Virus record (IMG/VR): IMGVR_UViG_3300017696_000161
Location: 1 to 5,692 of that record
Direction: 5' to 3' (one strand)
Length of the DNA: 5,692 nt
The position numbers were made by a program, and so were the translations under genes. The notes below the pieces were generated by a model, which had not been told where the DNA came from, made no database searches, and saw only the letters and a program-made list of their open reading frames with translations. This document shows, piece by piece, positions 1 to 5,692 of this stretch (within the stretch, counting starts at the first letter, position 1; every line of letters begins with the position of its first letter).

Positions 1-99
1 GAAGAAATTGAAGATACTGGTGCAAATGGTGCAAATTCCTATATCTCTCCAAATAATTCCGTAGAAAATTTCTCAACTGAAGATGAAGAAATTGAAGAT
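1..99 (+). repeat. End of the tandem array / terminal overlap with 5602-5692
   Basis: 1-91 is identical to 5602-5692; 16-99 is a full 84-bp A unit. Confidence 0.93.
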
Positions 100-1857
100 G
101 AGGGTATTGAAATTAAAGACAATAAGATTATAATACAATCAAAAGATAAACACAAGTTTGAAATATCATACGGTATAGCCTGGTCAATTGAAGACACTAC
201 CAGAATAATTGACCTCAAAATACCACAGTTACCGCAATGGGTTTTTACAGCTAAGAAAAAAGATGAGGTCTTAAACATACCAGTTATAGTAGACTTTTAT
301 CAACTAGAGGGTAAAACGGTATACTATATCAGAAATAAAAAAGAGGTAGTAGAGAAGCTTTACAACTTCAGAGGTCAAAGAAATATCTCAAAGAAACTTA
401 TTAGTGAAGCTCTAGACATCTGGCTAGACCGTATTGACCCCTCAAAGTACATAAAATGGGTAGATGTAAGAGATGTTGTTAAGAAGTACAAGGAATGGGA
501 GGAGATAAACCAAGACCCCATTGGTTTCTTCCTTTCAAGAGCTAAAGAGGTAGTAGGGAATGAAAAGTTGAAAATTGCGGTATTACTAAGTATTGTATCT
601 TCTCAGCTGAAGAAACTATATGGAATATACAGAGTTCACCTTATCCTTACTGGGAGTTCTGGTGTAGGAAAGTCTTCAACAATTAAATCGATGTTGAAAC
701 TATTCTATGATAACACTGATGGGGTTGAAGACTTCATAGTGCTGAAACTCACAAGGATGACAAAGGAGGCACTAGGGCGTATAAATGTTGATAGCATGGA
801 CGGGAAGGTCTTACTTGTGGAGCAATTGGATAACATAGAGGGTGTTGACTACATCAGGGAAGCCATGAGTGAGGATAGAATAACAACACTTACCACGGTC
901 AAAGACTCTGAGGGTAACTTAGTTTCAAGGACGATCGTTATCCCTGGTCAGCCAGCATTTATAACAACCAATGTTACCGCCAATGTCGATCATCAAATCC
1001 TAAATAGGTCGATCCAGCTTTACCTTAGCCCGATAGAGGATGAAAGCATTAAGGAAAAAATCATAAGGTCAATTTTAATGAGGAAAAGTGTAGGTGAAGA
1101 CTCAAAATTAAAACTTGTTACTTACGTTTGGTTAAAAACAAGACCTAACGACCCAGAGTTTACAGAGGCTTTAGCGTCAAAAGTTACTGAACTCCTCAAG
1201 AAGTTTATCAACACTAAAAACATCTACCGTGCTACGGAGATAACAAGGAATTTAATAAGAGCCACGGCATCGCTTTTCGGTCATGAGGAAATAACAATGG
1301 AGGACGTAAACTTTGTCATGGATTATTTCAAAAAGGACATTATCCTTACTACACTTGAACTTTCAGAGAGGGACTTACAGATATTGAAGTGGTTAAGAGA
1401 CCATGGTTTTGTAACAGCTGAGAAAGAAGATGAAACCAGAGACGTTACAACTTCAGAGATCTCACAAGTTATTAAGATGAGCACACAGGAGACCAAGAAG
1501 GTGTTGGACTCATTATATGACAAGGGTTTACTATGGAAGGCATATGACGGTAAGCGTTTCAGCTGGGCTATTAACCGCTACGGGTTAAGGGTGTTAGAGG
1601 AGTTAGAGAAAGAAGTTGAGGAAGAACAACAAGGAGAGGAAGAAGGAAGTGAGGTCTTAATCGATGACCGATTACTTGCTTATATCTCCTCAAAATTACT
1701 GGGGAAGAACCAGGTTACGGATGAAGAATTAAGGGGAATACTAGAAAAAACCGCACAAGCTACAGACCCAGAAGCCCAAGACTTGTTTATCACGGTACTA
1801 GAGAAGAAGAGGTTAATAAAGAATAACGGTGACGGGACATGGAAGGTTTCTCCTTAA
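1..1857 (+). CDS. Replication protein, C-terminal part: MCM-like AAA+ ATPase/helicase plus two winged-helix-like domains (5'-partial in the window; continues from 4639-5601)
   Basis: Frame 1 is open from base 1 to TAA at 1855-1857, so the TTG at 568 is not the true start. MCM-like motifs: DPIGFFLSRAKEVVGNEKLKIAVLL, Walker A HLILTGSSGVGKS (GSSGVGKS at 652-675), Walker B DGKVLLVEQLD (VLLVEQLD at 808-831), IREAM, presensor-1 hairpin-like TTVKDSEGNLVSRTIV, arginine-finger-like ILNRS (R at 1006-1008), sensor-2-like YRATEITRNLIRA. wHTH-like segments at about 1360-1584 and 1660-1854. Confidence 0.85.
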   Translation, partial: EEIEDTGANGANSYISPNNSVENFSTEDEEIEDEGIEIKDNKIIIQSKDKHKFEISYGIAWSIEDTTRIIDLKIPQLPQWVFTAKKKDEVLNIPVIVDFYQLEGKTVYYIRNKKEVVEKLYNFRGQRNISKKLISEALDIWLDRIDPSKYIKWVDVRDVVKKYKEWEEINQDPIGFFLSRAKEVVGNEKLKIAVLLSIVSSQLKKLYGIYRVHLILTGSSGVGKSSTIKSMLKLFYDNTDGVEDFIVLKLTRMTKEALGRINVDSMDGKVLLVEQLDNIEGVDYIREAMSEDRITTLTTVKDSEGNLVSRTIVIPGQPAFITTNVTANVDHQILNRSIQLYLSPIEDESIKEKIIRSILMRKSVGEDSKLKLVTYVWLKTRPNDPEFTEALASKVTELLKKFINTKNIYRATEITRNLIRATASLFGHEEITMEDVNFVMDYFKKDIILTTLELSERDLQILKWLRDHGFVTAEKEDETRDVTTSEISQVIKMSTQETKKVLDSLYDKGLLWKAYDGKRFSWAINRYGLRVLEELEKEVEEEQQGEEEGSEVLIDDRLLAYISSKLLGKNQVTDEELRGILEKTAQATDPEAQDLFITVLEKKRLIKNNGDGTWKVSP

Positions 1858-1889
1858 GCCGTGCTTTTGAATTTTCTGACTACAGCACT

Positions 1890-1911
1890 ATTAACCGAAT
1901 TCAGTTTTTTT
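1890..1911 (+). terminator. Putative oligo-T terminator downstream of rep
   Basis: T7 run at 1905-1911, about 50 bp after the rep stop, preceded by the near-palindrome AACCGAATTCAGTT. Confidence 0.45.
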
Positions 1912-1928
1912 ACAAAAGTGAGGAATTT

Positions 1929-1996
1929 TTATCACCTTCTTTCAATTTAACGGGTGATAAGATAATTATCATCCTTTTTAAATGCTTACGTGATAA
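1929..1996. promoter_or_regulatory. Putative int promoter/operator region
   Basis: IR TTATCACC (1929-1936) / GGTGATAA (1953-1960), perfect palindrome GATAATTATC (1961-1970), TATA-like TTTTTAAA (1975-1982), further GTGATAA (1990-1996). Confidence 0.45.
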
Positions 1997-2015
1997 ATAT
2001 AAACGGGCTGACGGA

Positions 2016-3044
<1,029 letters not shown>

Positions 3045-3100
3045 CTCATGAAGACGTCTAATAGCCGTTTTCTCCTTCACTCACTTCCCGCCTCATGACT

Positions 3101-3196
3101 GCTTGGATCACTTTCTATTTCTTTTCACCGTTCAGAGGTTGGATAGATGTAGTGAAGATGGATAGAGCTTGGGTCACTTTCTATTTTCTTTTCACC
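3101..3196. repeat. 29/30-bp direct repeat separated by a 37-bp unique segment, followed by a C11 run
   Basis: GCTTGGATCACTTTCTATTT-CTTTTCACC (3101-3129) and GCTTGGGTCACTTTCTATTTTCTTTTCACC (3167-3196); C run at 3195-3205. Confidence 0.85.
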
Positions 3197-4152
3197 CCCC
3201 CCCCCGATTCGGAATTCGAGTTCGGAGTTCGGTAAGGAAGGTGTGAAAGGTGGAAAAGGGTTAGCCTGGTTTGGGAAGTGATAGCTTGGGAAGGGAAAAA
3301 GCCTAGAAAGCTAAACCTGGCTCTAAGAAGGAGAGAAGGAAAGAAAGGGTTAGTCATAGGAAGGAAAGCTAGGCTAGGAAAGGTGTGTAAGGTGAAGAAG
3401 GAGAGAAAGCGAAGGAGAGAAAGCCTTAGCTTGGAAAATCGGGTAAACGGGAAAAGCTTGGAAAGGTGAAAGGGAGAAAGCCTTAGCCTAGAAAGACTGG
3501 AAAGCCTGGAAAGGTGTGAGAGGTGAGAAACACATAAACTAGACATAGACACATGCACAAAAGACCTGGGAAGAGGTGATGTCGGGCTGGGTTAGAGGTG
3601 TAAGGAGGGTAAGCAAAGCCAGGTTAGAGGTGTAAGGAGGGTAAGGTAAAACTAGTTGGATAAACTAGAAACGGGGTTAAGGGGCGATAGCCCCTTATAG
3701 ATTTTAGAAAGTGAAACTCTAGTGTAAACTCTAATGTAAAATGTTTAGAGAGGGAGTTAGGGAGGTAAGGAAACTAAACACACGCATAAAAAACTCGGGA
3801 AGAGATGATGCCAGGCTAGGTTTGGTATGGTGAGAAAGGTAAGCCAGCTAGAGAGGTAGAGGAGGTGAGAAAGGTGAAAAAGGTAGAGAAGGTGAAGAAG
3901 GAAGGTGGTAAGGTGAAGAAGGAGAGAAGGTAAGGAAGGTTTGAAAGTGAAAAAGCCTAAAGGAAGATGTTAGGAAGAAGTATGGAAGGTTAGGAAGAAG
4001 AGGAAGGAGTTAGGAAGCTGTTTGGAAGGTATGGAAGGAAGAAGGTTTGAAAGTGAAAAAGCCTAAAGGTAAAAGGTTAGCCAGGTAAGGGATAAAGTGT
4101 GTATAATACTAATTTTTAATAAATTAAACCCGAATTCGAACGGGCGGGCGGG
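3195..4152. other. Purine-rich, internally repetitive, apparently non-coding module bracketed by imperfect inverted repeats
   Basis: Purine counts: 51/60 in 3841-3900 and 49/60 in 3901-3960. Direct repeats: 29 bp (3935-3963 = 4041-4069), 24 bp (3590-3613 = 3622-3645), 21 bp (3387-3407 = 3908-3928), 45 bp imperfect (3549-3593 vs 3778-3822). Boundary IRs at 3195-3222 and 4127-4152. Confidence 0.75.
3678..3697. other. Perfect 8-bp GC-rich hairpin near the centre of the purine-rich module
   Basis: TAAGGGGC-GATA-GCCCCTTA. Confidence 0.8.
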
Positions 4153-4161
4153 CTTTTTTTT
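4129..4161 (+). terminator. Putative terminator: short GC stem plus T8
   Basis: CCCG-AATTCGAA-CGGG, then CGGGCGGGC and TTTTTTTT (4154-4161). Confidence 0.45.
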
Positions 4162-4416: not shown

Positions 4417-4590
4417 ATGGGTGAAAACATGTCCCCAAAAAGATCCGCACTACTACTACGATTAAGAGAAGAAGATAGAGAAATGATAAGACGGTTAGCA
4501 AAGTATTATGACATCGCTGAAGCGGATGTAATAAAGATCCTAATCAGAGAATACATGAAAAACCATAATATCGAGGTGGGCTCTTCATAG
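4417..4590 (+). CDS. copG: Ribbon-helix-helix (CopG-like) DNA-binding regulator, 57 aa (53 aa if started at ATG 4429)
   Basis: MGENMSPKRSALLLRLREEDREMIRRLAKYYDIAEADVIKILIREYMKNHNIEVGSS*: beta-strand (SALLLRL), helix A (EEDREMIRRLAK), turn, helix B (EADVIKILIREYM). Lies directly upstream of rep. GGTGA at 4420-4424 precedes the alternative ATG 4429. Confidence 0.85.
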   Translation: MGENMSPKRSALLLRLREEDREMIRRLAKYYDIAEADVIKILIREYMKNHNIEVGSS

Positions 4591-4638: not shown

Positions 4639-5692
4639 ATGGTCTTATCAAACTCTAAGTCAAATATGGTTAATAAACATAACGGTAGTCCAAGTAAGGG
4701 AGAAATGGACAGAGAGACACTCACGAAGGCGGTTGCTGAAAAAGTGAAAAAGTACAAAGAGGAGAAAAGCAAGACAGATGAAAAAATTAGAAAATATCTG
4801 GAGGAGAAATCTAAGTTAGAACGGGCGAATGCCAGTAATAATTCAGTGAGACAAGAAAATTCAAAAGTGACACAGAAAAAAGACAAAGACTCTAATAATA
4901 ATTCAGTGGCACAGCAAAATTCAACACTGGTGCATCGTAATACCGAGACAAATTCAAAAAATGTTGCACCAGTGGTAAAAAATTCTACGGAAGTAAACAG
5001 AGAGCATACTAAAAATGCACCAAATGCACCAGTATCGAATTTATCTTATGCACCAGTGCAAAAATCCAAAACTGGTGCAAATGGTGCAAATTCCTATATC
5101 TCTCCAAATAATTCCGTAGAAAATTTCTCAACTGAAGATGAAGAAATTGAAGATACTGGTGCAAATGGTGCAAATTCCTATATCTCTCCAAATAATTCCG
5201 TAGAAAATTTCTCAACTGAAGATGAAGAAATTGAAGATACTGGTGCAAATGGTGCAAATTCCTATATCTCTCCAAATAATTCCGTAGAAATAAACTCTGA
5301 TTGGGAAGAAAAATCCAATACTGATATAGGATTTAGTTCATCTGAAGATGAAGAAATTGAAGATACTGGTGCAAATGGTGCAAATTCCTATATCTCTCCA
5401 AATAATTCCGTAGAAATAAACTCTGATTGGGAAGAAAAATCCAATACTGATATAGGATTTAGTTCATCTGAAGATGAAGAAATTGAAGATACTGGTGCAA
5501 ATGGTGCAAATTCCTATATCTCTCCAAATAATTCCGTAGAAATAAACTCTGATTGGGAAGAAAAATCCAATACTGATATAGGATTTAGTTCATCTGAAGA
5601 TGAAGAAATTGAAGATACTGGTGCAAATGGTGCAAATTCCTATATCTCTCCAAATAATTCCGTAGAAAATTTCTCAACTGAAGATGAAGAAA
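4639..5692 (+). CDS. Replication protein, N-terminal part: basic/low-complexity region plus acidic tandem peptide repeats (runs off the window end; joins 1-1857 in frame, about 939 aa in total)
   Basis: ATG at 4639 preceded by GGTGA (4629-4633). Frame 1 has no stop to the window end (MVLSNSKSNMVNKHNGSPSKGEMDRETLTKAVAEKVKKYKEEKSK...TGANGANSYISPNNSVENFSTEDEE). The codon at 5602 corresponds to codon 1 of the window start. Confidence 0.82.
   Translation, partial: MVLSNSKSNMVNKHNGSPSKGEMDRETLTKAVAEKVKKYKEEKSKTDEKIRKYLEEKSKLERANASNNSVRQENSKVTQKKDKDSNNNSVAQQNSTLVHRNTETNSKNVAPVVKNSTEVNREHTKNAPNAPVSNLSYAPVQKSKTGANGANSYISPNNSVENFSTEDEEIEDTGANGANSYISPNNSVENFSTEDEEIEDTGANGANSYISPNNSVEINSDWEEKSNTDIGFSSSEDEEIEDTGANGANSYISPNNSVEINSDWEEKSNTDIGFSSSEDEEIEDTGANGANSYISPNNSVEINSDWEEKSNTDIGFSSSEDEEIEDTGANGANSYISPNNSVENFSTEDEE
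4836..4924 (+). repeat. Imperfect 29-bp direct repeat (period 60) in the rep N-terminus
   Basis: TAATAATTCAGTGAGACAAGAAAATTCAA (4836-4864) versus TAATAATTCAGTGGCACAGCAAAATTCAA (4896-4924); encodes NNSVxQxNS, related to NNSVEN of the array. Confidence 0.7.
4925..5079. repeat. Cluster of TGGTGCA/TGCACCA motifs in both orientations (iteron-like) inside rep
   Basis: CACTGGTGCA (4925-4934) / TGCACCAGTG (4965-4974) is a perfect 10-bp IR. TGCACCAAATGCACCAGTATC (5016-5036) is a 19/21 reverse complement of the array core GATACTGGTGCAAATGGTGCA. TGCACCAGT (5049-5057) / ACTGGTGCA (5071-5079) is another IR. Confidence 0.8.
5071..5692 (+). repeat. Perfect in-frame coding tandem array A-A-B-B-B-A (A = 84 bp/28 aa, B = 126 bp/42 aa)
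   Basis: Units start with ACTGGTGCAAAT at 5071, 5155, 5239, 5365, 5491 and 5617. A = TGANGANSYISPNNSVENFSTEDEEIED; B = TGANGANSYISPNNSVEINSDWEEKSNTDIGFSSSEDEEIED. The last A unit is completed at window bases 16-99. Confidence 0.95.

What the first reader, a model, noticed from the sequence alone, without database searches (positions are those of the whole stretch)
4925..5692. Iteron-like TGGTGCA motif on both strands inside rep: candidate intragenic, expandable replication origin
Seen: TGGTGCA occurs 13 times forward (4928 plus two per array unit) and 4 times reversed (4965, 5016, 5025, 5049). The reversed doublet at 5016-5036 is a 19/21 reverse complement of the array core and keeps the 9-bp spacing. 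The same DNA word encodes unrelated peptides (LVH, NAPNAPV, TGANGAN), which points to constraint on the DNA rather than the protein. Established: lambdoid phage origins lie as iterons within the initiator gene O. Inference: this Rep carries its own origin or autoregulatory binding sites within a tolerant disordered region, and array expansion would change iteron number and protein length together.
Basis: partly seen in the sequence, partly recalled or inferred. Interest (0 to 1): 0.76.

Follow-up and report, generated by a model that had tools for sequence, protein, structure and literature searches.

The report
Rep-binding palindrome inside archaeal rep gene
A small Sulfolobales plasmid hides, inside the start of its own replication-helicase gene, a 150-base DNA palindrome built from short repeats. 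Amino acids of that same helicase change in step with these repeats, which makes the palindrome the best candidate yet for the replication origin of this plasmid and virus family.

Summary
The window is a circular pSSVi-like integrative plasmid of about 5.6 kb, carried with a 91-nt end overlap. With the tandem array collapsed to one unit, TGGTGCA/TGCACCA occurs 7 times in 516 nt, against 2.4 in synonymous shuffles, and never in the other 4.5 kb.

The motif copies are the inner stem of a ~150-nt imperfect palindrome (4975-5130). It lies in the low-complexity N-terminal coding part of an MCM-like Rep gene.

All 18 close homologues with DNA, from plasmids and fuselloviruses, carry this palindrome at the same place. 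pSSVi and two other of five distant relatives carry one too. Each lineage has its own 9-mer. 31 of 48 base pairs show compensatory double changes and G-U pairs are almost absent.

Two Rep residues track the motif perfectly across 44 homologues. Asn98 versus His/Ser follows TGCA versus CACA (8 independent switches). Asp19 follows GG (9 switches). Each is the only perfect column out of 606.

The Rep protein therefore most likely reads these repeats. They behave as iterons set in a hairpin-capable palindrome, probably the origin. Origin versus autoregulatory operator is unresolved. Array copy number in the window is uncertain because of assembly.

The parts
4417..4590 (+). ORF56/CopG-like ribbon-helix-helix gene upstream of rep (57 aa)
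   Evidence: ORF. The matches are weak: ORF56 family and RHH, a PHROG DNA-binding protein. pSSVi has an ORF56 family gene at the same position.
4639..5692 (+). 5' part of the Rep-like ORF. It encodes a low-complexity N-terminal region of about 350 aa and continues at nt 92 of the window across the circle junction (939 aa in all).
   Evidence: Open frame from ATG 4639 that runs off the window end. The frame continues at codon 91-93, and the joined ORF has a single terminal stop.
1..1857 (+). 3' part of the Rep-like ORF. Bases 1-91 duplicate 5602-5692. The core is MCM-like: N-terminal beta domain, helical domain, P-loop ATPase, C-terminal winged helices.
   Evidence: About 70% identity to ASV1_C674 and SSV7_B471 and 37% to pSSVi ORF735. 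AF2 model pLDDT 73.8. All top 50 Foldseek PDB hits are MCM subunits. Weak Pfam match to the MCM P-loop.
4926..4934 (+). Upstream single copy of the 9-mer ACTGGTGCA, read as T-L-V-H
   Evidence: It is complementary to 4965-4973 (pair I9).
4965..4973 (-). Upstream single reverse copy TGCACCAGT, read as V-A-P-V
4975..5130 (.). The ~150-nt imperfect palindrome (one module), with four helices: outer, middle, inner and apical
   Evidence: DNA fold -29.8 kcal/mol, z = -9.35. Consensus structure with covariation in 14 homologues. Also picked up as a long hairpin by the Rfam e-value scan.
4983..4992 (+). Outer-stem left arm TTCTACGGAA (codes N-S-T-E)
   Evidence: Perfect 10-nt complement of 5112-5121. 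T/V, P/G and A/A peptide pairs co-vary in about 40 homologues.
5000..5008 (+). Middle-stem left arm (GAGAG.ATA)
   Evidence: Folds. Helix 2: 5 of 8 pairs compensatory.
5016..5033 (-). Inner-stem left arm: two reverse 9-bp repeats (TGCACCA AA TGCACCAGT), read as N-A-P-N-A-P-V
   Evidence: pairs I4, I5. Helix 3: 16 of 18 pairs compensatory, 93.7% paired.
5037..5067 (.). Apical region with the conserved AT-rich ends GAATTT and AAAAATCC, plus a third single motif copy (5049-5057, reverse)
   Evidence: Invariant columns in A2. The third copy is reverse here and in L020 and L022, but forward in ASV1, L008, L015, L016 and L021.
5071..5088 (+). Inner-stem right arm: two forward 9-bp repeats (ACTGGTGCA AAT GGTGCA), read as T-G-A-N-G-A
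5095..5104 (+). Middle-stem right arm (TAT.CTCTC)
5112..5121 (+). Outer-stem right arm TTCCGTAGAA (codes N-S-V-E)
5071..5692 (+). Tandem array of complete right halves of the palindrome. Units: A 5071-5154, A 5155-5238, B 5239-5364, B 5365-5490, B 5491-5616, A 5617-5692 (continuing as 16-99). A is 84 bp and B is 126 bp. All units are in frame and each carries two forward repeats.
   Evidence: TRF rows with 99-100% identity, reading of the sequence, terminal overlap.
145..147 (+). Codon of Asp19 (numbering of window:91-1854), at the tip of a basic beta-hairpin (S-K-D-K-H-K). It co-varies with GG at motif positions 4-5.
   Evidence: 44 of 44 homologues, 9 changes each on the tree, 7 of 7 supported independent pairs, p = 0.016.
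376..384 (+). Codons Gln96-Arg97-Asn98 in the basic loop R-G-Q-R-N-I-S-K-K. Asn98 co-varies with TGCA versus CACA. Gln96 partly co-varies with motif position 4.
   Evidence: Asn98 is the only perfect column of 606 (14 Asn versus 27 His and 3 Ser). There are 8 changes each on the tree and 8 of 8 independent pairs, p = 0.0078. Gln96.
1839..3044 (+). SSV-type integrase with an internal attP (tRNA fragment 2202-2257 on the minus strand). Context that places the replicon in the pSSVi class.
   Evidence: Pfam Phage_integr_3 at 2.6e-53 and SSV1_ORF_D-335, megablast to fusellovirus and pXZ1 integrases and att sites, Rfam tRNA fragment.

Best explanation
The TGGTGCA copies are binding sites (iterons) for the plasmid's own MCM-like Rep protein. 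They are arranged head-to-head as the inner stem of a ~150-bp palindrome that can form a hairpin, and the palindrome sits in the low-complexity N-terminal coding part of the rep gene.

Proposed mechanism (inferred). Rep uses a basic beta-hairpin (Asp19) and a basic loop ahead of a helix (Gln96, Asn98) to read positions 4-7 of the 9-mer. The inverted doublets then place Rep oligomers in two opposed orientations around an AT-rich centre, as an MCM-type double hexamer needs. The extended complementarity (outer, middle and apical stems) lets the region fold into a hairpin or cruciform once melted, as in the pRN1 stem-loop origin. The site would thus be the cis-acting origin that travels with its initiator gene in plasmids and fuselloviruses.

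Extra forward copies, including the 6-unit array in this window, would change the number of Rep sites and the protein length together. They could tune copy number or incompatibility.

Shown: the palindrome exists, is conserved and co-varies; the motif is confined to this region; two Rep residues co-vary with the motif.

Inferred: physical binding, helicase loading and origin function.
For: (1) Motif enrichment. With the array collapsed there are 7 copies against 2.41 in synonymous shuffles (0 of 2000 reach 7), and none in the other 4547 nt.

(2) Family-wide conservation. All 18 close homologues with DNA have a ~150-nt palindrome at the same place, with fold z-scores from -5 to -11 and a median of -9.1. 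Three distant relatives have one with unrelated sequence but the same plan of 2-3 nine-bp repeats per arm: pSSVi (z = -10.1), Msed_2283 and L027.

(3) Covariation. 87.4% of cells are paired against 75.1% in shuffles. 31 of 48 pairs have double changes, against 16.6 in shuffles and 6-14 in the slid controls (0 of 500 shuffles reach 31). In the inner helix 16 of 18 pairs are compensatory.

(4) DNA rather than RNA. Only 4 G-T pairs against 11 A-C and 583 Watson-Crick. Copies of the word are read in three frames.

(5) The lineage motif occurs outside the region at chance level in 120 kb of flanks: 16 hits against 14.6 expected.

(6) Protein-DNA co-evolution. Asn98 versus His/Ser tracks TGCA versus CACA in 44 of 44 homologues and is the only perfect column of 606. 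There are 8 changes each on the tree and 8 of 8 independent pairs (p = 0.0078). Asp19 tracks GG in 44 of 44, with 9 changes and 7 of 7 supported pairs (p = 0.016). Two homologues outside the test set fit the same pattern: Msed_2283 (42% identity, TGCCACA) has D-R-H and Asn as expected, and P0044 also fits.

(7) Internal control. The outer-stem type changes 7 times on the tree but has no associated protein column; the best has 5 errors.

(8) Rep folds like MCM.

(9) Precedent. The pRN1 origin is a 100-nt stem-loop whose integrity is required (PMC4234260, PMC3869888).

(10) The ~1-kb purine-rich non-coding region, the other candidate in this window, has no counterpart in any relative.
Against: No experiment or read-depth data bears on initiation, so origin function is inferred only from a Rep-specific site cluster plus a palindrome.

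Two of the five distant homologues (L025, an SSV10-like virus, and L014) showed no palindrome at the search settings used.

Cruciform extrusion is disfavoured in relaxed or positively supercoiled DNA of hyperthermophiles (general knowledge), so the hairpin may form only after melting.

The residue-motif correlation could in principle reflect co-evolution of the core with the peptides that the motif encodes, rather than with the DNA.

The window also has 1 kb of unexplained non-coding DNA that could be its origin.

The fuselloviruses that carry the gene also encode the conserved DnaA-like ATPase. They may therefore use another origin, leaving this site with a different role.

Rep classification rests on a medium-confidence model (pTM 0.59, TM about 0.3 for the whole chain).
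Confidence: 0.6

Rival explanations
1. Rep-binding operator or copy-control site, not the origin. Rep binds its own coding DNA to block or attenuate transcription of rep, or to pair plasmids (handcuffing) and set incompatibility. Initiation would happen elsewhere, for example in the purine-rich non-coding region of this plasmid.
For: The same evidence for Rep recognition applies. Variable copy number of the sites is typical of copy-control iterons. The window has 1 kb of unexplained non-coding DNA. Viruses that carry the gene have other replication genes.
Against: The sites lie 290-450 nt inside the ORF, far from the promoter. The extended palindrome with pure base-pair covariation in the outer and middle stems is not needed for an operator. 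The non-coding region is not conserved in any relative, whereas the palindrome is conserved in all close ones. This role does not exclude an origin role.
Confidence: 0.2
2. RNA-level element. The hairpin forms in the rep mRNA or in an antisense transcript and controls translation, mRNA stability or priming.
For: A strong conserved hairpin lies in a transcribed region. Mismatches compatible with G-U on the antisense strand (11 A-C) outnumber those on the sense strand (4 G-T). Countertranscripts are known for the pRN1 replication operon (my recollection of Berkner and Lipps 2007, not checked here).
Against: G-U pairs are almost absent among 672 cells. The same word recurs outside the hairpin and in tandem expansions of one arm only, giving 13 forward against 4 reverse copies, which a 1:1 stem does not need. 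Rep residues co-vary with the sequence of the word, not merely with pairing. The element is far from the start codon. Caveat: G-U pairs may be counter-selected at 80 C anyway.
Confidence: 0.08
3. Signal for another factor. Examples are a packaging or mobilisation signal that lets the satellite plasmid be taken up by helper fusellovirus particles, or a site for the ORF56-like RHH protein.
For: pSSVi is packaged with the help of SSV1 or SSV2 (my recollection of Wang et al. 2007; partly echoed in PMC8371274). RHH proteins bind short repeats in direct and inverted order (general knowledge). An RHH gene sits just upstream in the window, pSSVi and the Metallosphaera element.
Against: The helpers SSV1 and SSV2 lack this gene and palindrome: the only SSV2 matches to the window are in the integrase. 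In most viruses no RHH gene is adjacent. The co-varying residues are in Rep itself.
Confidence: 0.07
4. No function. The repeats are a by-product of slippage and duplication in a low-complexity, disordered linker, or of protein-level selection on the repeat peptides.
For: The region is low-complexity, rich in older degenerate repeats (NNSV..NS) and prone to tandem duplication.
Against: It cannot explain inverted copies kept in register, compensatory changes in 31 of 48 pairs, conservation from the window to pSSVi and Metallosphaera, the same word in three frames, or co-variation with two residues of the folded core.
Confidence: 0.03

Closest known systems
pRN1 (pRN-family) stem-loop origin of Sulfolobus plasmids
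   Same: It belongs to a small Sulfolobales plasmid with an ORF56/CopG-plus-Rep operon. The cis element is a ~100-nt DNA stem-loop whose integrity is required, and it is conserved as a structure rather than as a sequence in relatives (PMC4234260, PMC3869888).
   Different: The pRN1 element lies downstream of orf904, not inside the gene. The pRN1 Rep is a prim-pol plus SF3 helicase protein, whereas here it is MCM-like without a primase domain. The pRN1 loop carries a GTG primase motif. No repeated lineage-specific 9-mers and no co-varying Rep residues have been described for pRN1. There is no sequence similarity.
Phage lambda ori inside gene O (iterons in the initiator's own coding sequence)
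   Same: The binding sites for the initiator lie within the initiator gene, in the part that encodes a flexible linker, so origin and initiator travel together (textbook knowledge).
   Different: Lambda has four 18-19-bp iterons in direct order next to an AT-rich stretch, and O is not a helicase. Here 9-bp repeats form inverted doublets inside a 150-bp palindrome, with tandem expansion of one arm. The host is archaeal and the protein family is different.
Palindromic core origins of initiator-helicases (SV40 large T antigen site II, papillomavirus E1 binding sites)
   Same: Short recognition words are arranged as inverted pairs and are read by the origin-binding domain of a hexameric AAA+ helicase. 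The helicase assembles head-to-head on the two halves, and AT-rich or palindromic flanks melt (textbook knowledge).
   Different: Those helicases are SF3, with no homology to this MCM-like protein. Their origins are intergenic. Binding and double-hexamer formation are only inferred here.
pSSVi ORF735 / ASV1_C674 / SSV7_B471 / Msed_2283 protein family (Pfam PF27228, MTBMA_p00010_2nd domain)
   Same: The window's Rep is a member: 37% identity to pSSVi ORF735 and 64-70% to the viral proteins. The replicon layout matches pSSVi: ORF56-like gene, large Rep, SSV-type integrase.
   Different: The N-terminal extension here is the longest seen (358 aa, against 56-346 in relatives) because of the 6-unit array.

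Membership tests
pSSVi-like integrative plasmids of Sulfolobales | Large Rep without a prim-pol domain, homologous to pSSVi ORF735 | tested here: met
   tblastn gives 37% identity over 63% of the core, E = 4e-57, to NC_013777. No primase domain in Pfam.
pSSVi-like integrative plasmids of Sulfolobales | SSV-type integrase with attP inside the gene, and an ORF56/CopG-like gene upstream of rep | tested here: met
   Phage_integr_3 at 2.6e-53 and the D-335 N-terminal domain, tRNA fragment at 2202-2257, RHH ORF at 4417-4590 with weak matches. The layout matches pSSVi.
Iteron-type origins or Rep-binding arrays | Several copies of one short word clustered at a single locus of the replicon | tested here: met
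   7 independent copies in 516 nt and none elsewhere in the window. The same holds in 18 relatives, each with its own word.
Iteron-type origins or Rep-binding arrays | The word is bound specifically by the replicon's own initiator | tested here: inconclusive
The indirect evidence is strong: two Rep residues co-vary perfectly with two parts of the word, and two homologues outside the test set fit the pattern.
Iteron-type origins or Rep-binding arrays | Required in cis for replication; initiation maps there | not testable with these tools
   This needs minimal-replicon, 2D-gel or marker-frequency experiments.
Iteron-type origins or Rep-binding arrays | Direct repeats of about 17-22 bp in one orientation | tested here: not met
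   The repeats are 9 bp and occur in both orientations as inverted doublets.
pRN-type stem-loop origin | Long DNA stem-loop conserved as a structure among relatives | tested here: met
   z = -9.35 for the window and a median of -9.1 for 18 modules. 31 of 48 pairs are compensatory.
pRN-type stem-loop origin | Located downstream of a prim-pol/SF3 Rep gene, with a GTG primase motif in the loop | tested here: not met
   The element lies inside the 5' part of an MCM-like gene, and no prim-pol domain is present. A GTG is present in the apical region (5055-5057) but is not conserved in the alignment.
MCM-family helicases | AAA+ core of the MCM clade with an N-terminal DNA-binding domain and a C-terminal winged helix | tested here: inconclusive
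   All top 50 Foldseek hits are MCM subunits, with E down to 3e-7. Whole-chain TM is about 0.3, rising to about 0.5 on AAA-only chains, and the model pLDDT is 73.8. The Pfam MCM P-loop match is below threshold (18.5 against 23.3 bits). Hallmark inserts and the arginine finger were not examined.

The most novel reading that the evidence does not exclude
The element would be a self-contained, fast-evolving origin-initiator module. An MCM-like helicase reads 9-bp words written into the coding sequence of its own disordered N-terminus. The words (all copies, both arms) and two reading residues (Asp19, Asn98) have switched together at least 8-9 times among elements that are otherwise 75-88% identical.

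This would give co-resident plasmids and fuselloviruses private, mutually compatible origins. It would also supply a simple amino-acid-to-base recognition code (Asn with TGCA, His or Ser with CACA, Asp with GG), and would be the first mapped origin candidate for any fusellovirus.
Probability: 0.45. Interest if true: 0.88.

Novelty: new variant of a known kind. Interest (0 to 1): 0.8.

Why it matters
Replication origins of Sulfolobales plasmids other than pRN1 are unknown, and so are those of all fuselloviruses. [quoted passage not shown]

This finding gives an exact, conserved and testable candidate for the pSSVi family and for the ASV1/SSV7-type viruses. It also names the residues of the initiator that should read it. 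That would help build Sulfolobus shuttle vectors with chosen compatibility.

It is also a clean natural case of a DNA element overlapping a coding region. The element dictates the peptide sequence of a disordered segment, so mirror-image peptide pairs arise from the two arms. Its copy number and the protein length change together.

Tried and rejected
1. GC skew and cumulative skew to locate an origin. The skew is positive all along because all genes are on one strand, so it is not informative.

2. Rfam. Only a sub-threshold hairpin look-alike (a plant miRNA precursor, 29 against 117 bits) and the tRNA/attP fragment were found, so this is no known RNA family.

3. Sequence-profile searches of Rep (Pfam, NCBIfam, PHROGs, PDB sequences). 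They gave only weak P-loop and wHTH hits. The fold search was needed to classify the protein.

4. Genome-contig scans. Both found nothing. The metagenome scan found 4 loci and the two viral scans 6, including the window's own contig. Most DNA came from exact-protein look-ups.

5. Module swapping by recombination as the cause of motif changes. I rejected this for the window/P0003 pair. Their flanks around the motif are alike while every motif copy differs, and the motif type does not follow the Rep tree.

6. The purine-rich non-coding region as the conserved cis partner of Rep. No relative has it.

7. A protein column associated with the outer-stem type. None was found, and this served as a control.

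8. Hairpin energies at 75 C from my script looked unreliable because of parameter handling, and I do not use them.

9. Literature. No accessible paper describes this palindrome. The original pSSVi paper and the MMBR review were not held.
Full report
What the window is. Bases 1-91 are identical to 5602-5692, and the large ORF that runs off the 3' end continues in frame at the 5' end. The window is therefore one turn of a circle of about 5.6 kb plus an overlap. It is the IMG/VR contig IMGVR_UViG_3300017696_000161.

It carries four features:
- an ORF56/CopG-like RHH gene (4417-4590);
- a 939-aa Rep-like ORF (4639-5692 joined to 92-1857);
- an SSV-type integrase with an internal tRNA-derived attP (1839-3044);
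- about 1 kb of purine-rich non-coding DNA.

This is the layout of the Saccharolobus satellite plasmid pSSVi. The Rep core is 37% identical to pSSVi ORF735. It is 64-70% identical to ASV1_C674, SSV7_B471 and proteins of other fuselloviruses. About 50 homologues exist in metagenomes and in Acidianus, Sulfurisphaera and Metallosphaera genomes. An AlphaFold model built on 44 sequences (pLDDT 73.8) matches only MCM subunits among its top 50 PDB hits. "Rep" here therefore means an MCM-like helicase with C-terminal winged helices and no primase domain.

The observation. The array copies are exact duplicates and cannot be counted as independent. With the array collapsed to one unit, 7 copies (3 forward, 4 reverse) remain in 516 nt. 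Shuffles that preserve the protein and its codon usage give 2.41 on average and never 7 (0 of 2000). Codon permutation gives 0.15. The rest of the replicon has none.

The array is A A B B B A, with units of 84 and 126 bp, all in frame and 100% identical. The contig starts and ends inside it, so the true number of units is uncertain.

What the motif copies belong to. The reversed doublet (5016-5033) and the first forward doublet (5071-5088) are the inner stem of a much larger imperfect palindrome at 4975-5130. It has three more helices:
- an outer stem, TTCTACGGAA at 4983-4992 against TTCCGTAGAA at 5112-5121;
- a middle stem, GAGAG.ATA against TAT.CTCTC;
- a short AT-rich apical stem.

As single-stranded DNA the module folds at -29.8 kcal/mol, z = -9.35. 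Each array unit is a complete right half of this palindrome, so the window has one left half and six right halves. Further single copies of the 9-mer lie upstream (4926 forward, 4965 reverse) and in the apical region (5049 reverse).

Comparative evidence. I obtained DNA for 17 close homologues. Every one has a palindrome of the same plan at the same place in the N-terminal coding region. Codon-permutation z-scores range from -5.1 to -10.7, with a median of -9.1. Each lineage uses its own 9-mer:
- ACTGGTGCA in the window, ASV1 and L021;
- ACTGGCACA in L008, L015, L016 and L022;
- AGCGACACA or AGCGACACT in L002, L011 and L019;
- ACCGTAACA in SSV7;
- ACTGCCACA in L005;
- ACTAACACA in L006;
- GATGCA types in L017 and L020;
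- GCGTGACA in L023.

In an alignment of 14 modules, 87.4% of cells are Watson-Crick or G-U paired, against 75.1% in column shuffles (0 of 500 shuffles reach the observed value). 31 of 48 pairs show changes on both sides, against 16.6 in shuffles and 6-14 when the partner is slid by 1-3 columns. The inner helix has 16 of 18 compensatory pairs and 93.7% pairing.

The encoded peptides change in matched pairs in more than 40 proteins. For the inner stem the pairs are AP/GA, VP/GT, AS/DA, VS/DT, VA/AT, VV/TT and VL/NT. For the outer stem they are T/V, P/G and A/A. The protein sequence here follows the DNA palindrome, not the reverse.

Three distant relatives also have a strong palindrome in the N-terminal coding part. 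Its sequence is unrelated but it is again built of 2-3 nine-bp repeats per arm:
- pSSVi: 482-536 against 546-600, z = -10.1;
- Metallosphaera sedula Msed_2283: TGTGGCAAAAGTGGCA against TGCCACAAATGCCACA;
- L027: three repeats per arm.

Two other distant relatives (L025, L014) showed none at the settings used.

DNA or RNA. Among 672 paired cells there are 583 Watson-Crick pairs, 4 G-T and 11 A-C. Conserved RNA helices normally show many G-U intermediates. Their near absence points to DNA-level complementarity, with the caveat that G-U may be disfavoured at 80 C. The same word also occurs outside the palindrome and in one-sided tandem expansions: 13 forward against 4 reverse copies here, 17 against 9 in L022, and 1-4 extra 33-bp units in the P0017-P0025 population. 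A 1:1 stem does not require this.

Who reads it. The lineage motif is confined to this region. In 120 kb of flanking DNA of the 18 elements it occurs 16 times, against 14.6 expected. The motif type does not follow the Rep tree. Well-supported sister pairs differ (window against P0003, P0017 against P0027, ASV1 against L002, P0015 against P0016), and the same motif recurs in separate clades. In the window/P0003 pair the surrounding codons are alike while every copy of the word differs. The copies therefore changed in concert in place.

I then asked whether any column of the folded Rep core tracks the motif. Of 606 columns in 44 homologues, exactly one separates TGCA-type words from CACA-type words without error. 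This is the residue in F-R-G-Q-R-[N/H]-I-S-K, which is Asn98 in the window (nt 382-384). The 14 TGCA-type proteins all have Asn. The 30 CACA-type proteins have His (27) or Ser (3). The next best column has 4 errors. On a tree built without that column, motif class and residue each change 8 times, and 8 of 8 independent pairs go the same way (p = 0.0078).

A second column sits at the tip of a basic beta-hairpin, S-K-[D]-K-H-K (Asp19, nt 145-147). It is Asp in all 25 proteins whose word has GG at positions 4-5, and Asn, Ser or Lys in the other 19. Each character changes 9 times, and 7 of 7 supported pairs agree (p = 0.016). Gln96 partly tracks position 4.

Two homologues outside the test set also fit. 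The 42%-identical Metallosphaera protein (word TGCCACA) has D-R-H and Asn, as the pattern predicts, and P0044 fits too.

As a control, the outer-stem type changes 7 times but has no associated column; the best has 5 errors. The method therefore does not manufacture perfect associations. It also suggests that the outer stem is kept for complementarity as such.

One caveat remains. The correlation could in principle be with the peptides encoded by the word rather than with the DNA. The word is read in three frames, which makes the DNA the simpler partner.

Interpretation. The data show a cis element with two layers. The first layer is sequence-specific words that the replicon's own MCM-like protein most likely reads, which makes them iterons. 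The second is a larger palindrome kept by base-pair complementarity.

A cluster of initiator-helicase sites in two opposed orientations around an AT-rich centre is the logic of known palindromic origins (SV40 large T antigen, papillomavirus E1). A long stem-loop whose integrity matters is the one mapped Sulfolobus plasmid origin, that of pRN1 (PMC4234260, PMC3869888). Sites inside the initiator's own gene, in a linker-coding part, recall lambda ori in gene O.

I therefore rate "intragenic replication origin and Rep loading site" as the best explanation, at 0.6. A Rep operator or copy-control site that is not the origin comes second, at 0.2, and is not exclusive of the first. RNA-level, packaging and no-function readings are much weaker.

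Whether that tunes copy number is untested, and the unit number itself needs read-level confirmation.

Novelty. Intragenic origins, iterons and stem-loop origins are all known kinds. I found no description of this element in the accessible literature, and PMC6080066 states that no SSV origin has been functionally characterised. The original pSSVi paper could not be read, so prior mention of the pSSVi palindrome cannot be excluded.

The following appear new:
- family-wide conservation of the palindrome;
- peptide pairs dictated by a DNA palindrome;
- repeated concerted switches of word and reading residues.

I file it as a new variant of a known kind, with high interest because it is immediately testable in laboratory Sulfolobales.

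Noticed in passing
window 3060-4130 (flanks 3197-3207 and 4141-4160): About 1 kb of non-coding DNA is 73% purine on the + strand (GC skew +0.5 to +0.65) and full of short degenerate repeats. It is bounded by a C-run and by GGGCGGGCGGGC followed by T8. Two copies of a ~25-nt word (G[G/A]TCACTTTCTATTT..CTTTTCACC) lie at ~3104-3128 and ~3172-3197. None of the 26 related loci has anything similar, and its function is unknown. It could be an ncRNA or this plasmid's own additional cis element.
   Followed up: partly
window 2152-2280: The attP tRNA fragment inside the integrase gene (2202-2257, minus strand) is flanked by a 33-nt inverted repeat rich in G and C runs (2152-2184 against 2248-2280, 85% complementary).
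   Followed up: no
window 1-91 and 5602-5692: The terminal 91-nt direct overlap lies inside the tandem array. The circle is real, because the Rep ORF closes across the ends. The number of 84- and 126-bp units in the assembly may be wrong.
   Followed up: partly
window 5239-5616 (B units), e.g. 5257-5268 against 5323-5334: Each 126-bp B unit carries AATTCCTATATC and, 54 nt later, its near complement GATATAGGATTT. This makes a small extra hairpin that is absent from A units.
   Followed up: no
L016, L017, L019, L020, L022, L023, and L001/L003: In the fuselloviruses the MCM-like gene directly follows an XPD/Rad3-like helicase gene (ResIII, DEAD_2, Helicase_C_2). The plasmids (window, pSSVi, the Metallosphaera element) lack it and have an RHH gene upstream instead.
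   Followed up: no
proteins P0026, P0030, P0006 (no DNA fetched): These homologues have the left-arm peptide (NVANVAV) but no matching right-arm peptide. The stretch V-P-H-L-P-Q would encode the expected complementary word in another reading frame. If so, the DNA arm is kept while the frame differs.
   Followed up: no
L025 (MK054236, gene 1655-3586) and L014 (gene about 1777-3459): Two distant homologues (37-39% identity) show no palindrome in the N-terminal coding part at seed 9 and minimum length 12. The element may be lost, diverged beyond detection, or placed elsewhere.
   Followed up: partly
L022:3001-4040 (P0027, 926 aa): The whole palindrome module is present three times in tandem within one gene (17 forward and 9 reverse motif copies). 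This is a different way of expanding from the one-armed array in the window.
   Followed up: partly
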